IMG/VR virus record: IMGVR_UViG_3300017917_000952 | Location: 124,001 to 188,000 of that record | Length of the DNA stretch: 64,000 nucleotides | Strand: one strand, 5' to 3' | Part shown: positions 2,014-4,745 of the stretch, piece after piece | How positions within the stretch are numbered: the stretch's first letter is position 1 | How the letters are laid out: every line of letters begins with the position of its first letter | Notes under the pieces: model-generated | The model's input: only the letters and a program-made list of their open reading frames with translations | Databases searched by the model: none | Told to the model about the DNA's origin: nothing | Program-made: the position numbers and the translations under genes

Positions 2014-2302
2014 AAATTTGGCTCGATATCTAGAGCTTTACTCAGAATATGTTAAGGCAAGAGTAGGTGTGCATAACTACCATGTAAGGTTTACTGAATA
2101 TGTAGGTAGAGAATCCTACTACAGGTTAGGTGAATGCATACGCAAGTTGCCAAAGATCGAACAAGAACTACTTAAAACTGCAAGAGCGGCTATAAAAGAA
2201 CAAAAAGAACTAGATAAGGCTGCGAAACTTGCAGACAAGTTACAGCGTCGAAAGAAAAGATCACTAAAGAATGTGGACGTATCAAGGGGAAATAGTAAAT
2301 GA
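2000..2302 (+). CDS. Hypothetical basic protein (100 aa)
   Basis: ORF overlapping both neighbours in an operon-like arrangement; no recognisable motif. Confidence 0.6.
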   Translation: MSNNKNLARYLELYSEYVKARVGVHNYHVRFTEYVGRESYYRLGECIRKLPKIEQELLKTARAAIKEQKELDKAAKLADKLQRRKKRSLKNVDVSRGNSK

Positions 2303-2702
2303 ACTACCAGATGACTGTGTAGGATTTGTCTATCTCATTACGAACACAACAAATAATAAAAAATACATTGGCAAAAAACTAGCAAAATTTAGCAAAACAA
2401 CCTATAAAACAGTAAAATTAAAAAACGGCAACAAAAAGAAAAAGAAAATTCGTAGCAAAATTGACAGCGACTGGCAGGAATATTACGGGTCCAGTCCAAA
2501 TCTAACAGAAGATGTCAACACCTTAGGCAAAGAAAAATTCACAAGAGAAATACTTTACTATTGCAAATCTAAATCAGAATGCAGTTATATCGAAGCAAGA
2601 GAACAATTTACTCGTAAAGTTTTAGAATCTGACGAATATTATAACGGACATATACAAGTCCGTGTACATGGCTCCCATATCAAAGGCAAATTAAACGGTT
2701 AA
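2271..2702 (+). CDS. Small GIY-YIG family nuclease (Seg-like catalytic domain only)
   Basis: GFVYLITNTTNNKKYIG motif, later EAREQF (metal Glu) and YYNG (conserved Asn); Lys-rich insertion; no C-terminal DNA-binding domain. Confidence 0.8.
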   Translation: MWTYQGEIVNELPDDCVGFVYLITNTTNNKKYIGKKLAKFSKTTYKTVKLKNGNKKKKKIRSKIDSDWQEYYGSSPNLTEDVNTLGKEKFTREILYYCKSKSECSYIEAREQFTRKVLESDEYYNGHIQVRVHGSHIKGKLNG

Positions 2703-3060
2703 AGCTCAGCGCAGGCTAACTTCGTGCGCCCGAAATCCTTGGTGATGTCGCAGGGTAAGGAAATCTCTCGCCGTTCAAGAGTACTCAGCAAGTATCCTTA
2801 ACAGGACCACGATCGCGAAATGCCGCGGTTTTGCTGTTTGAATAGAGTGAAATAAGGCCCAAGGATGGAGAATTAACAATAACTCCACGGTTCTTATACA
2901 AGATAGCGTTTGTATAATGACCCGCCGTTGTGAAGACTGGGATGGAGGTACCGGACAACCGCCTCTGTTAAATACCCTAACGCTGTGTGACTGCGATACT
3001 CAGATAATGTCAAACTTTGCCCTTAACGGGCTTAGTGTGACCGTTCTATCTAGATAATAT
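2703..3060 (+). ncRNA. Candidate large structured non-coding RNA (unassigned family)
   Basis: ORF-free, more GC-rich than flanks, many complementary helices by eye: 2709-13/2725-29, 2735-42/2859-66, 2765-68/2844-47, 2774-78/2838-42, 2786-91/2831-36, 2795-98/2803-06, 2811-17/2824-30, 2866-70/2883-87, 2889-2901/2910-22, 2945-48+2952-54/2959-65, 3019-22/3028-31, plus long-range 2746-53/2991-98 and 2752-57/2973-78. Strand assumed from flanking genes. Confidence 0.55.
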
Positions 3061-3064
3061 TTAA

Positions 3065-3127
3065 AACACTTCGTGTTGAAAAATGCTTCGAGTCGAAGAC
3101 GAAGAAGAACACGAACGCAGTTCGTGT
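3065..3127. repeat. Cluster of three short inverted repeats with 3-nt loops
   Basis: AACAC-TTC-GTGTT (3065-77), CTTCG-AGT-CGAAG (3086-98), ACACGAAC-GCA-GTTCGTGT (3109-27). Confidence 0.85.
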
Positions 3128-3134
3128 ATAAATA
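3127..3134 (+). promoter_or_regulatory. T4-type late promoter TATAAATA
   Basis: Exact T4 gp55 late consensus 24 nt upstream of ATG 3159. Confidence 0.8.
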
Positions 3135-3158
3135 ACACAACATATTTCTGGAAAAAAA

Positions 3159-4745
3159 ATGAATCTTTCCTCTTTATTATCGAAAATTGACTCTCTTGAG
3201 AATAGCCCAAGACAAAGTATCTTTGAGAGTATTGGCCAAGGAGATCAATATTTCCGTACATGGGAACGAGACATACATCCTGTACTATGTGAAGTAGCAA
3301 TGAGCCCTGAACAAATTCAACAACTATTCAAAGGAGTTGAAGCAGGTGCAGGAAGAAGTACCTTAGGTAAAGGCCTTGATGCAGTTAAAGGCGCTACAGA
3401 TAAAGTTAGCGATGCATGGTTTAACAAATTCGGTGGAATGCTACAGAACAGTACACCAGTACAGGCTTTCGATCAGAAATATGAAGATATTAAGAGCAAG
3501 ATTGCTGCAAAGCATCCAGACCTTGCAGCAAAATTAGCCAAGTACGGTGAATTTGCTAAAGAACATCCAAACTGGCACAAATTTCTATTAGCGATTGCAG
3601 GATCAGTTGCTTCTGCTGTTGGCGTTGCTGCCGCAGGAGGTGTTGGAGCAGGTGCTCTAGCAATAGGTACAGGTGTTGGTGTTGCAACAGGTATTCTTAA
3701 TATTGCAGATAGATTATTACAAGGACAAAAGGCGTCAACTGCTATCGGTCGTGGAGCAACTACTGGAGCAATAGCAGGCGTTACTGCCGGTGTACTTTCA
3801 AAAGTTGGATCATGGCTAGGCTCCATGAGAGAAAAATCTATTCCGTTCGGCCCAGAGGATGCGGGCCTAGAAAGAATCAGTTGGGATGCTAAAAAGACAT
3901 TAACTGCTCCGGGCATGGAGTGGACACAACGAACACAAGGATTCCAAGCATTAGTTAAAGCAGAAGACGCTTCCGCAATTCGTGCAGCAATGAATCAAAT
4001 CAGTACCAATCCAGGAACTGGTGGTTTTGAAGAGTTACAACGACTAGGAAGAATGGTTGCTAGTAAGGATTACATAGCCAACATGCAGACTGCGGTTGAC
4101 GGAGCATTTGCCGCAGCAAAGAATAACGACAGTTTATTGCAATTCATCAATACTGTTACTCAAGGAGCAGCAGCCGCTTCCGGTGGCGCCGCTAGTGCTG
4201 CGACAGCGTCTGGTGGTCAACAGCCTAAGCCGACAGCGGAGTCATTAAGCAGAACACAGGTTAACGAACTATTTGGCATTACTGGAAATAAAGTTGATGC
4301 TGCCAAATTACAAAAGGCTTGGGTAAAAGCAGGTAGTCCTACTGACAGCGAAGAAATTGCAAAAATACTTCAAGCGGCAGGAGTCGAATCTTCAGTAATT
4401 TCGAAAGCATTTACTGATATGTCGTTACCAGAACCTACAAGTACAGCAAGTGTAGCACCTGCTAAAGACAGTGCAGCCGCACCTGACAATGCAGCGCCCG
4501 TAGATGCTACTGCACCTACAGATACTAAACCTGCAACTGCTGAGCCGGCCGCTACTGCACCTGCTGCTCAACAAAGCAAAGTTGGTGTTGGACAAATTAA
4601 TAAAATTATCCCAACACTCCGTCTTCGAGATTTGAAGAGTGTACAAAAGACAGTAGATGCGGCTCTTGCTAAACGTACAACATCTACACAACCTACTAAC
4701 GAAAGTGTAGTGTTTTACAGCAAGTTTTTAGATAAAGAAATTTAA
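3159..4745 (+). CDS. Ala/Gly-rich hypothetical protein, probable internal/ejected virion protein (528 aa)
   Basis: Late promoter upstream; hydrophobic Gly/Ala segment (AVGVAAAGGVGAGALAIG); C-terminal domain shared with next ORF. Confidence 0.6.
   Translation: MNLSSLLSKIDSLENSPRQSIFESIGQGDQYFRTWERDIHPVLCEVAMSPEQIQQLFKGVEAGAGRSTLGKGLDAVKGATDKVSDAWFNKFGGMLQNSTPVQAFDQKYEDIKSKIAAKHPDLAAKLAKYGEFAKEHPNWHKFLLAIAGSVASAVGVAAAGGVGAGALAIGTGVGVATGILNIADRLLQGQKASTAIGRGATTGAIAGVTAGVLSKVGSWLGSMREKSIPFGPEDAGLERISWDAKKTLTAPGMEWTQRTQGFQALVKAEDASAIRAAMNQISTNPGTGGFEELQRLGRMVASKDYIANMQTAVDGAFAAAKNNDSLLQFINTVTQGAAAASGGAASAATASGGQQPKPTAESLSRTQVNELFGITGNKVDAAKLQKAWVKAGSPTDSEEIAKILQAAGVESSVISKAFTDMSLPEPTSTASVAPAKDSAAAPDNAAPVDATAPTDTKPATAEPAATAPAAQQSKVGVGQINKIIPTLRLRDLKSVQKTVDAALAKRTTSTQPTNESVVFYSKFLDKEI

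What the first reader, a model, noticed from the sequence alone, without database searches (positions are those of the whole stretch)
2703..3060. Candidate large pseudoknotted ncRNA immediately downstream of a GIY-YIG nuclease gene
Seen: the only long intergenic stretch in an otherwise gene-dense 64 kb, starting at the GIY-YIG stop codon, packed with mutually compatible helices: an 8-bp closing helix ATCCTTGG/CCAAGGAT (2735-42/2859-66) enclosing nested stems and a three-way junction (2765-2847), hairpins at 2709-29, 2866-87, 2889-2922, a bulged GAGG-UAC-CGG-ACAA-CCG-CCUC hairpin (2945-65), and two long-range pairings from inside the first domain to the 3' part (TGTCGCAG/CTGCGATA 2746-53/2991-98; AGGGTA/TACCCT 2752-57/2973-78) that would be pseudoknots. 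That architecture is ribozyme/RNP-like. It does not match tRNA, tmRNA, RNase P, or a complete group I/II intron by eye. Inference: a nuclease-associated RNA (analogy: IscB/omega-RNA, TnpB/reRNA, where a compact nuclease is paired with an adjacent structured RNA), a new ribozyme, or a structured replication-origin transcript. A late-type TAAATA also sits inside it (2969-74).
Basis: partly seen in the sequence, partly recalled or inferred. Interest (0 to 1): 0.85.

Follow-up and report, generated by a model that had tools for sequence, protein, structure and literature searches.

The report
Known orphan phage RNA, full-length form
The gap after the GIY-YIG nuclease gene holds a real, strongly folded non-coding RNA of about 360-425 bases, but its first 136 bases belong to a motif catalogued in 2010 (Polynucleobacter-1 RNA, Rfam RF01718) whose function is still unknown.

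Summary
The structured RNA is real. Window 2704-2839 matches Rfam RF01718 (Polynucleobacter-1 RNA) at 74.2 bits against a gathering score of 37. The conserved element runs on to about 3059, the unmodelled 'tail', and three small hairpins follow up to 3127.

In 116 non-identical relatives from uncultivated large or jumbo myoviruses, 13 helices and three pseudoknots show compensatory changes. Its three long-range pairings are not conserved. The true pseudoknots are 2703-05 x 2715-17, 2903-09 x 2980-86 and 2927-31 x 2955-59.

In an RNA-first scan of these phages, 109 of 119 copies follow the GIY-YIG gene, a homologue of P-SSM2 PSSM2_218, the context the 2010 authors reported. The pairing is not obligatory:
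- Seven phages have a PD-(D/E)XK nuclease in that slot.
- Seven have unrelated genes inserted between nuclease and RNA.
- 457 isolate phages have the protein, but no isolate has similar DNA, and none of the four checked has a comparable gap.
- Bacterial copies lie in a cassette between a DUF6641 gene and a short tyrosine recombinase, with no nuclease.

One new feature stands out. Two 3' modules carry a 7-nt sequence that varies between genomes yet is identical within each RNA. Function is unknown; I favour an autonomous trans-acting RNA.

The parts
2271..2702 (+). GIY-YIG-domain-only nuclease gene (143 aa). It is a homologue of P-SSM2 PSSM2_218 and of phrog_447, a family mis-named 'NAD synthetase'.
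   Evidence: PF19835 at E 1e-33; phrog_447 at E 9e-37; 34% identity to PSSM2_218, E 8e-19. GIY and YIG motifs are visible in the translation.
2703..2839 (+). 5' domain, matching Rfam RF01718 Polynucleobacter-1 RNA. It comprises PK0, P1, P1a, P2, P3 and the junction P4/P5/P6.
   Evidence: cmscan 74.2 bits against a gathering score of 37, model positions 1-141 of 141. Covariation in 116 relatives.
2703..2717 (+). PK0: the first three bases after the stop codon (2703-05) pair with the P1 loop (2715-17).
   Evidence: AGC/GCU changes to GAC/GUC and GGC/GCC in relatives. MI pair GC:83 AT:27. 86% canonical at the +1 register.
2709..2729 (+). P1 hairpin (2709-13 / 2725-29).
   Evidence: 100% canonical; 5 of 5 pairs show two-sided changes.
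2737..2754 (+). P2 hairpin, atypically short in this copy. It is closed by P1a (2730-31 / 2759-60).
   Evidence: Rfam alignment. 95% canonical at the -1 register. P1a is 97% canonical, CG:90 GC:11.
2763..2782 (+). P3 hairpin.
   Evidence: 90% canonical; 5 of 5 pairs compensatory.
2786..2836 (+). P4 (2786-91/2831-36), which closes a junction holding P5 (2792-97/2804-08) and P6 (2811-16/2825-30). P6 plus the U-rich 3' strand of P4 also scores as a terminator-like site.
   Evidence: P4 99%, P5 98% and P6 96% canonical, with compensatory changes. Terminator-like hit at 2811-2830.
2840..3059 (+). 3' domain ('tail'), not in the Rfam model. It comprises P7, P8, PK-A, PK-B, P9, P10, P11 and the twin modules.
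   Evidence: nhmmer homology to about position 375-395 of the element in relatives. Own covariance model R1: 159.6 bits at 2886-3062, the only copy in the window.
2866..2887 (+). P7 hairpin.
   Evidence: Inner pairs 85-93% canonical with GC/UA/CG/AU types.
2889..2922 (+). P8 hairpin. Its loop (2903-09) forms PK-A.
   Evidence: 12 of 12 pairs show two-sided changes.
2980..2986 (+). 3' strand of pseudoknot PK-A, pairing with the P8 loop 2903-09.
   Evidence: 92% canonical against 25-51% in slid controls; 7 of 7 pairs compensatory. Examples: CUAGCA/UGCUAG, CUGAUA/UAUCAG.
2927..2931 (+). 5' strand of pseudoknot PK-B, pairing with 2955-59, the loop of the P10 hairpin.
   Evidence: 98% canonical. 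2929/2957 UA:83 CG:33; 2930/2956 GC:79 AU:31.
2938..2978 (+). P9 (2938-42/2974-78), which encloses P10 (2945-48/2962-65) and the invariant GGUACCGGACAACCGCC.
   Evidence: 2939/2977 is the top MI pair: GC:52 CG:32 UA:20 AU:8. P9 is 92% and P10 96% canonical. Invariant columns listed.
2987..3008 (+). Twin module M1: GUGAC, a 6-nt spacer, ACUC, then the heptamer AGAUAAU (3002-08).
   Evidence: Heptamer identical to that of M2 in 82 of 82 (regex) and 109 of 116 (alignment columns) relatives, with 11 or more variants.
3015..3035 (+). P11 hairpin between the two modules.
   Evidence: 93% canonical; 3018/3032 UA:67 AU:22 CG:14.
3037..3058 (+). Twin module M2: GUGAC, a 6-nt spacer, AUCU, then the heptamer AGAUAAU (3052-58).
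   Evidence: Parallel covariation with M1 at 3002/3052, 3003/3053, 3006/3056, 3008/3058 and in the spacers. At least 21 state changes on a tree built from 2703-2985.
3066..3127 (+). Three small hairpins after the core: Ha (UUCG loop, 3066-78), Hb (3087-99) and Hc (3108-27). They are possible 3' end, terminator or processing structures.
   Evidence: Hc pairs 3110-15/3121-26 are among the top MI pairs and are 94% canonical at the +1 register. Ha and Hb are seen in alignment A1 but are poorly aligned.
3127..3134 (+). TATAAATA (T4-type late-promoter consensus), 24 nt before the downstream ORF 3159-4745.
   Evidence: Only 3 copies in 64 kb, each 24-45 nt upstream of an ORF of at least 80 aa. Its reading as a late promoter rests on knowledge of T4.

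Best explanation
Shown:
- Window 2703-3059 (+ strand) is a full-length, two-domain copy of the Polynucleobacter-1 RNA. The 5' domain matches RF01718. The 3' domain is the unmodelled 'tail'.
- The RNA folds into about 13 helices and three pseudoknots.
- It is carried by a clade of uncultivated large or jumbo myoviruses at a fixed place: gp46 (Rad50-like), then a small nuclease, then the RNA, then hairpins, then a late-promoter-like TATAAATA.
- It starts within about 30 nt of the stop codon of whatever ORF lies upstream.

Inferred:
- It has no room for a promoter of its own, so it is made as the 3' extension of the upstream early transcript and then exists as a stable folded RNA.
- It is an autonomous functional module, not a partner of the GIY-YIG protein in particular. 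The same RNA family sits with its own upstream TATAAATA-like box in bacterial cassettes that hold no nuclease.

Proposed mechanism (weakly supported): the pseudoknotted body is a scaffold. Around hairpin P11 it displays two equivalent modules (GUGAC, spacer, AYCU, heptamer). Their 7-nt sequences must be the same as each other, but may differ between genomes. The RNA would therefore act in trans by engaging two copies of one partner. That partner would be a short complementary nucleic acid or a symmetric (dimeric) protein, so the RNA would work as a decoy, a regulator or the core of an RNA-protein complex.

Confidence that this is an RF01718-family structured RNA is about 0.97. Confidence in the trans-acting twin-site mechanism is about 0.3.
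For: - Rfam hit 74.2 bits against 37, over the full model.
- Homologues of the whole 2708-3095 stretch lie directly after the GIY-YIG stop in 41 of 60 loci by single-sequence nhmmer. With the profile, 63 of 75 loci score, and the remaining 12 have a same-sized gap; the nine of those aligned hold a divergent 'type B' RNA with the same 3' design.
- Unsupervised MI-APC recovers Watson-Crick pairs for all helices and for PK-A and PK-B. Pair counts are 90-100% canonical against 0.1-0.78 in slid controls.
- G.U cells number 561 against 71 A.C cells, which places the RNA on the + strand. The only ORF in the window copy is kept in 1 of 116 relatives.
- Autonomy: bacterial and MAG copies lack the nuclease. 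A PD-(D/E)XK nuclease replaces GIY-YIG in 7 loci, and unrelated ORFs are inserted in 7.
- The protein occurs in 457 isolate phages, while no isolate phage has similar DNA. Four isolate loci that I checked have no comparable gap.
- Twin heptamers are identical in 82 of 82 and 109 of 116 relatives, with 11 or more variants and at least 21 changes on an independent tree. The same design appears in types B and C and in bacterial copies.
Against: - No transcript data exist, so the ends, stability and timing of the RNA are all inferred.
- No partner for the heptamers was found. No complement occurs in cis within 1.5 kb, none is enriched in the 64-kb window, and none lies near the bacterial copies.
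- The heptamers are only moderately accessible in a thermodynamic fold: unpaired probability 0.39 for R1 and 0.62 for R2.
- Concerted evolution of the two modules could instead come from gene conversion, or from a DNA-level protein site.
- My 3'-domain covariance model does not reach the bacterial or type B copies at E <= 0.1. Their 3' similarity rests on inspection and on the 2010 alignment.
- Linkage to a nuclease gene within the phage clade is near-total, which still allows a functional tie.
Confidence: 0.55

Rival explanations
1. Nuclease cofactor or guide. The RNA binds the small, DNA-binding-domain-less nuclease encoded just upstream and aims it at nucleic acid through the two identical heptamers plus adjacent spacers, by analogy with IscB/TnpB omega RNAs.
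For: - In phages the RNA nearly always follows a small nuclease gene (116 of 119).
- Two unrelated nuclease folds, GIY-YIG and PF24608 PD-(D/E)XK, occupy the same slot.
- The GIY-YIG protein is a catalytic domain only: 143 aa, with the domain covering residues 2-128.
- The heptamers vary between genomes within a constant scaffold.
Against: - Orthologues of the protein occur in 457 isolate phages, while no isolate phage has similar DNA and four checked loci have no comparable gap.
- The RNA occurs in bacteria with no nuclease nearby.
- Genes of 0.8-1.8 kb are inserted between nuclease and RNA in 7 loci.
- The variable part is only 7 nt with about 11 variants, mostly purine transitions.
- No complementary sites were found.
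Confidence: 0.1
2. Cis-acting intergenic element. It would be a 3' UTR or operon-end structure that stabilises, terminates, insulates or antiterminates the early transcript, or that controls expression of the upstream nuclease, and would have no function as a free RNA.
For: - It starts within 30 nt or less of the upstream stop codon in every phage.
- It sits at the boundary between an early recombination cluster and a late-promoter-like TATAAATA.
- Conserved hairpins Ha, Hb and Hc follow it.
- P6 with its U-run looks like a terminator.
- Weinberg 2010 scored the motif as possibly cis-regulatory.
Against: - A 360-nt, triple-pseudoknotted fold with many invariant unpaired bases is far more than a terminator or stabiliser needs.
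- Both the upstream and the downstream genes vary.
- Bacterial copies stand alone in a 1-kb gap, divergent from the neighbouring gene and with their own conserved upstream TATAAATA-like box.
Confidence: 0.15
3. Ribozyme. The RNA would be self-processing or otherwise catalytic, for example cutting itself free from the upstream mRNA at its 5' edge.
For: - It has a large, pseudoknotted architecture with invariant junction nucleotides.
- The 5' boundary coincides with the stop codon, and its first three bases are locked into PK0.
Against: - No known self-cleaving ribozyme or group I or II intron model matches, even at E <= 10.
- No split host gene is present.
- Nothing in the sequence data speaks to catalysis.
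Confidence: 0.08
4. DNA-level element. The twin modules would be two copies of a protein-binding DNA site, like iterons or operators, or a replication-origin or primer region, and the upstream structure would be a pre-primer transcript.
For: - Parallel (not complementary) covariation of two 22-nt direct repeats about 50 bp apart is the signature of repeated protein-binding sites.
- Bacterial copies lie between inverted repeats next to a recombinase.
Against: - The modules are embedded in, and abut, helices that covary as RNA, with G.U pairs specific to one strand.
- No further copies occur in the window.
- The constant differences between M1 and M2 (ACUC against AUCU) persist.
Confidence: 0.04

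Closest known systems
Polynucleobacter-1 RNA motif (Rfam RF01718; Weinberg et al. 2010, PMC2864571)
   Same: - Full-length match to the covariance model, with the same helices and conserved junction bases.
- The same 3' 'tail' sequences as in the original alignment (GGAGGUACCG...AACCGCCUC).
- The same upstream gene family (PSSM2_218-like).
- The same freshwater and Burkholderiales association.
   Different: - The Rfam model stops at 2839. In this copy the element continues for about 220 nt.
- PK-A, PK-B, PK0 and the twin identical heptamers are set out here (the 2010 file only labels a 'tail' and a 'tailpknot').
- The 2010 authors found no copy in a purified phage. The context here is clearly a large myovirus.
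- Variants B and C, and the PD-(D/E)XK context, are additions.
HEARO / omega RNA of IscB, and TnpB reRNA
   Same: A structured RNA encoded next to a compact nuclease gene. It was first catalogued as an orphan motif in the same 2010 survey.
   Different: - Co-occurrence with the nuclease is not obligatory here.
- There is no long hypervariable guide.
- No transposon ends are present.
- No target match was found.
Large orphan ncRNAs of phages and prophages (GOLLD, ROOL)
   Same: Hundreds of nucleotides long, multi-pseudoknotted, carried by phages or mobile DNA, and not tied to one neighbouring gene. This comparison is from my own knowledge.
   Different: No sequence or model match: the Rfam scan is negative apart from RF01718. 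This RNA is also smaller. Whether it forms multimers is unknown.
IS110-family bridge RNA
   Same: One RNA with two similar binding modules that must share a short identical 'core'. This is an analogy only, from my own knowledge.
   Different: - No DEDD recombinase is present.
- The bacterial neighbour is a catalytic-domain-only tyrosine recombinase, and it also occurs without the RNA (L211).
- No matching DNA sites were found.

Membership tests
Rfam RF01718 Polynucleobacter-1 RNA | Covariance-model score at or above the curated gathering score, over the whole model. | tested here: met
   74.2 bits against 37, model positions 1-141 of 141, E 7e-14 for the 64-kb window.
Rfam RF01718 Polynucleobacter-1 RNA | Consensus helices (P1, P2, P3 and a multistem junction with two inner hairpins) maintained by covariation. 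| tested here: met
   P1 100%, P3 90%, P4 99%, P5 98% and P6 96% canonical with two-sided changes. P2 is 95% canonical at the -1 register.
Rfam RF01718 Polynucleobacter-1 RNA | 3' 'tail' with extra hairpins and a pseudoknot, as annotated in the original Stockholm file. | tested here: met
   The flanks in the 2010 alignment show ugggauggagguaccg and AACCGCC motifs. The same elements lie at 2938-2965. PK-A and PK-B are supported. Correspondence with the authors' exact pseudoknot was not checked column by column.
Rfam RF01718 Polynucleobacter-1 RNA | Located downstream of a GOS11034 / PSSM2_218-like gene. | tested here: met
   The window GIY-YIG against PSSM2_218: 34% identity, E 8e-19. 109 of 119 RNA-first loci have this gene upstream.
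Guide RNA of a compact nuclease (IscB/TnpB-like) | RNA and nuclease co-occur wherever either is found. | tested here: not met
   The protein occurs in 457 isolate phages; no isolate phage has similar DNA, and four checked isolate loci have no comparable gap after the gene. The RNA occurs in 7 of 8 genome loci without the nuclease. A PD-(D/E)XK gene or inserted genes lie upstream in 14 loci.
Guide RNA of a compact nuclease (IscB/TnpB-like) | A hypervariable guide segment of 12 nt or more next to a constant scaffold, matching a DNA target. | tested here: not met
   Only two 7-nt segments vary, with about 11 variants. No complementary site in cis, in the window or near the bacterial copies.
Guide RNA of a compact nuclease (IscB/TnpB-like) | Physical RNA-protein complex and RNA-dependent cleavage. 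| not testable with these tools
   Needs pull-down and cleavage assays.
Group I intron with a homing-endonuclease ORF | Match to the group I core, and interruption of a host gene. | tested here: not met
   No Intron_gpI hit even at E <= 10. The flanking genes are complete, and the downstream gene differs between phages.
Known self-cleaving ribozyme classes | Match to an Rfam ribozyme model. | tested here: not met
   Rfam scan of 2600-3200 at E <= 10: only RF01718 and two chance-level hits. Catalysis itself is not testable here.
tRNA / tmRNA | ARAGORN detection. | tested here: not met
   No tRNA or tmRNA gene in the whole window.

The most novel reading that the evidence does not exclude
The RNA is a programmable specificity module for domain-poor DNA enzymes. 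Its two modules would use their identical 7-nt 'core' plus the adjacent variable spacers to recognise two DNA sites (or half-sites) that share a core. The enzyme would be the catalytic-domain-only nuclease in phages (GIY-YIG or PD-(D/E)XK), or the 188-aa tyrosine recombinase that lacks a core-binding domain in bacterial cassettes. This would be a guide or bridge RNA for enzyme families not known to use one.
Probability: 0.07. Interest if true: 0.92.

Novelty: new member of a known kind. Interest (0 to 1): 0.42.

Why it matters
The motif has sat in Rfam since 2010 as an orphan, known from 16 environmental sequences and one bacterium, with no copy in any purified phage. The results here do four things:
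- They place it in the genomes of a large clade of uncultivated freshwater myoviruses. More than 120 IMG/VR contigs carry it, some of 260-345 kb.
- They define its full length and its three pseudoknots.
- They show that it moves as an autonomous module between phage and bacterial mobile DNA.
- They expose a sharp, testable constraint: two 7-nt segments that must be identical.

That constraint gives a direct experimental handle on a complex RNA of unknown function. If the partner turned out to be DNA together with one of the adjacent enzymes, it would be a new kind of RNA-guided system. If not, it is one more well-described orphan RNA.

Tried and rejected
- **DNA similarity to isolate phages.** No match for 2650-3160 in blastn distant mode.
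- **Folding energy.** Single-sequence z-scores are uninformative.
Rejected by pair counts.
- **Late promoter at 2969-74.** Not conserved.
- **Coding explanation.** The 46-aa ORF 2917-3057 is kept in 1 of 116 relatives.
- **tRNA or tmRNA.** None in the window.
- **A complement to the heptamers.** No fixed site within 1.5 kb. No enrichment in the window: ATTATCT occurs 3 times against 6 expected. No third module near the bacterial copies.
- **A helix between R1 and R2.** Suggested by RNAfold in type A, but it cannot form in type B or the bacterial copies, and it would not explain why the heptamers are identical.
- **DUF6641 as a hidden nuclease or RNA-binding protein.** The AlphaFold model has pLDDT 81 but no PDB fold match (best E 0.45). 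No literature was found.
- **DUF6641 and the recombinase as obligate partners of the RNA.** Rejected, because L211 has both proteins with a 165-aa ORF in place of the RNA.
- **Invertible-switch idea.** 25-nt inverted repeats flank the RNA in L085, but all assemblies show one orientation. I did not pursue this.
- **3'-domain covariance model.** It did not reach the type B or bacterial copies.
- **Literature search for RNA-guided tyrosine recombinases.** Nothing relevant.
- **The count of structure pairs.** Not used, because it needs a typed structure string of several hundred characters. I made the equivalent counts in Python.

Full report
**What is at the coordinates.** The window is part of a large myovirus.
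- A Rad50-like gp46 gene (232-2013; SMC_N/AAA_23) is followed by a 100-aa ORF.
- Next comes a 143-aa GIY-YIG-only protein (2271-2702; PF19835, E 1e-33), then a 456-nt gap.
- After the gap come a 528-aa ORF and baseplate genes.
- The nearest isolates by gp46 are PA5oct-like jumbo phages, at 50% identity.
- The gap 2703-3158 is the longest ORF-free stretch of the 64 kb. The runner-up holds an 82-aa ORF.

**Identity.** An Rfam scan of the whole window gives one hit: RF01718, Polynucleobacter-1 RNA, at 2704-2839 on the + strand. It scores 74.2 bits against a gathering score of 37 and covers all 141 model positions. At E <= 10 nothing else of substance matches 2600-3200.

The family comes from Weinberg et al. 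2010 (PMC2864571). Their supplement makes four points:
- The motif is found in environmental samples and in one Polynucleobacter genome.
- Its 3' half is not always detected.
- Most copies lie downstream of genes of family GOS11034, with possible homology to PSSM2_218 of cyanophage P-SSM2.
- No purified phage had a copy.

Their raw alignment also carries a 'tail' subfamily with a pseudoknot, and its flanks contain 'ugggauggagguaccg' and 'AACCGCC'. The same sequences lie at window 2938-2965. I confirmed that PSSM2_218, annotated 'NAD synthetase', is a homologue of the window's GIY-YIG protein (34% identity, E 8e-19). So both the 5' part of the RNA and its gene context were already described. 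Its function was not.

**Is the structure real?** Folding energy alone says nothing: z = -0.91 for the + strand and -0.65 for the - strand. The comparative evidence is strong.
- The GIY-YIG protein has at least 544 relatives in IMG/VR.
- The DNA after its stop codon is homologous over about 375-395 nt in most loci.
- I collected 116 non-identical full-length copies, 47-78% identical to the window.
- An unsupervised mutual-information scan returns Watson-Crick covariation for every helix listed under 'parts'.

Pair counts give 90-100% canonical cells, with two-sided changes, for P1, P1a, P3, P4, P5, P6, P9, P10 and P11. P8 has 12 of 12 pairs compensatory. Three tertiary pairings are also supported:
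- PK0: 2703-05 with the P1 loop 2715-17.
- PK-A: the P8 loop 2903-09 with 2980-86. It is 92% canonical, and 7 of 7 pairs are compensatory.
- PK-B: 2927-31 with 2955-59. It is 98% canonical.

G.U cells outnumber A.C cells 561 to 71, so the + strand is the RNA. The only ORF in the window copy survives in 1 of 116 relatives.

The local hairpins and the junction are correct. The three long-range pairings are not kept in relatives: 30%, 47% and 65% canonical, at or near the slid controls. Positions 2974-77 covary with 2939-42 instead. The TAAATA at 2969-74 is not conserved. A TATAAATA sits at 3127-34, 24 nt before the next ORF, after three small conserved hairpins.

**Linkage to the nuclease.** I ran an RNA-first scan of IMG/VR with a 5'-domain pattern.
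- 109 loci have the GIY-YIG gene upstream on the same strand, mostly 4-80 nt away.
- In 7 of those 109, genes of 0.8-1.8 kb are inserted between the two. One insert is a radical-SAM protein.
- 7 loci have a PF24608 PD-(D/E)XK endonuclease in the same slot instead.
- One locus has an unrelated 135-aa ORF upstream.

Twelve loci with a close GIY-YIG gene gave no nhmmer hit. Ten of them were scanned with Rfam and gave no hit either. Nine of them have a same-sized gap holding a divergent 'type B' RNA with the same 3' design, and the type C loci have a different 5' part. Within this phage clade the linkage is therefore essentially complete.

It is not general, however.
- The protein family (phrog_447) occurs in 457 isolate phages, yet no isolate phage has similar DNA.
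- Four isolate loci that I checked (Melnitz-3, ACP17, ACG-2014d and P-SSM2) have no comparable gap after the gene.
- A scan of 185,579 species genomes found 8 loci, 7 of them convincing, including the Polynucleobacter rarus chromosome. None has the nuclease.

In those genomes the RNA lies in a gap of about 1 kb, divergent from a DUF6641 gene in 6 loci. In 3 loci a 189-218-aa catalytic-domain-only tyrosine recombinase follows it. One further locus (L211) has DUF6641 and the recombinase with the same flanks but a 165-aa ORF in place of the RNA. So in bacteria the RNA is a swappable cargo. The RNA behaves as an autonomous module.

**The unexplained feature.** The 3' end carries two modules, M1 (2987-3008) and M2 (3037-3058), on either side of hairpin P11. 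Each consists of GUGAC, about 6 nt, AYCU and a heptamer. The heptamers (3002-08 and 3052-58) behave as follows:
- They are identical to each other in 82 of 82 copies parsed by pattern, and in 109 of 116 by alignment column. Of the seven exceptions, five reflect truncation or misalignment and two differ only in the last base.
- Eleven or more variants exist.
- On a tree built only from 2703-2985, the heptamer state changes at least 21 times.
- Types B and C and the bacterial copies follow the same rule with other heptamers.

I found no complementary partner in cis, in the window or near the bacterial copies. Selection for sameness rather than for a particular sequence suggests two equivalent contacts with one kind of partner. 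It could also reflect a DNA-level repeat.

**Mechanism and verdict.** The best reading is a stable, trans-acting structured RNA. It would be made as the 3' end of the early nuclease transcript and would present twin recognition sites. I hold this with low confidence. The rivals are a nuclease cofactor or guide, a cis-acting operon-end element, a ribozyme, and a DNA-level site. They are set out above with what would refute each.

This is a new member, and a fuller description, of a known orphan family. It is not a new class. Its interest is moderate. The guide- or bridge-like reading is unlikely, but it would matter if true.

Noticed in passing
L085:4191-6249; L088:1668-3764; L084:345-2124; L211:2300-4441: Bacterial and MAG genomes carry a recurring three-part unit. 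It consists of a DUF6641 gene, a cargo segment of about 1 kb, and a 188-218-aa tyrosine recombinase with a catalytic domain only. The cargo segment is bounded by inverted repeats of about 15-25 nt (L085 4666-90 / 5617-41). The cargo is the Polynucleobacter-1 RNA in most loci but a 165-aa ORF in L211. This looks like a cassette or an invertible or dif-like module. DUF6641 has 2,686 homologues and no known fold.
   Followed up: partly
L152:8259-8777; L172:4127-4642 (also L119, L153, L158, L162, L167): In seven phage contigs a PF24608 PD-(D/E)XK endonuclease (171 aa) occupies the exact slot of the GIY-YIG gene, between gp46 and the RNA. This is a non-homologous replacement of one small nuclease by another.
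   Followed up: partly
L016:4699-5220; L020:4424-4890; L063:4687-5144; L070:3224-3610; L078:4424-4832: Divergent RNA variants fill the same gap. Type B has a different 5' and middle part and the heptamer ACAUGAA in both modules. Type C has another 5' domain. Rfam does not detect either type. My 3' model detects type C only.
   Followed up: partly
window 3002-3008 and 3052-3058: In nearly all phage variants, including type B and all but two rare ones (GGAAAAU, and a shifted GGAGAAA reading), the heptamer reads as a sense codon plus a stop codon (NNA-UAA or NNA-UGA, then N). The bacterial heptamers do not. In this copy the two modules are exactly 50 nt apart. No conserved ORF ends at either site, so I have no explanation.
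   Followed up: partly
window 2947-2954: The invariant GGUACCGG inside P10 includes the self-complementary hexamer GGUACC. It could mediate RNA-RNA dimerisation. Because it never varies, covariation cannot speak to this.
   Followed up: no
window 2811-2840: Hairpin P6 followed by UUUUGCUGUUUG scores as an intrinsic-terminator-like site inside the RNA, at the end of the Rfam model. A short form of about 135 nt and a long read-through form are conceivable. That would fit the 2010 remark that the 3' half is 'not always detected'.
   Followed up: no
L095:10375-11148; L129:4678-6488; L159:1898-2734: Accessory genes are inserted between the GIY-YIG gene and the RNA: a 257-aa unknown protein, a B12-binding radical-SAM protein together with a 151-aa ORF, and a 278-aa unknown protein. 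In each case the RNA still begins 17-26 nt after the new upstream stop codon.
   Followed up: partly
phage records (e.g. NC_006883 176711-177148, NC_041997 9483-9905): The GIY-YIG family (phrog_447, PF19835) is annotated 'NAD synthetase' in hundreds of public phage genomes. This looks like a propagated misannotation.
   Followed up: partly
window 3159-4745: The downstream 528-aa ORF is rich in Gly and Ala, matches no Pfam or PHROG family, and is present after the RNA in only a few relatives. The gene downstream of the RNA is variable.
   Followed up: no
window 3127, 27382 (+ strand) and 6581 (- strand): TATAAATA occurs only three times in 64 kb, about 4 being expected per strand by composition. 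Each copy lies 24-45 nt before an ORF start. If these are T4-type late promoters, most late genes in this phage must use a different signal or lie in long operons.
   Followed up: no
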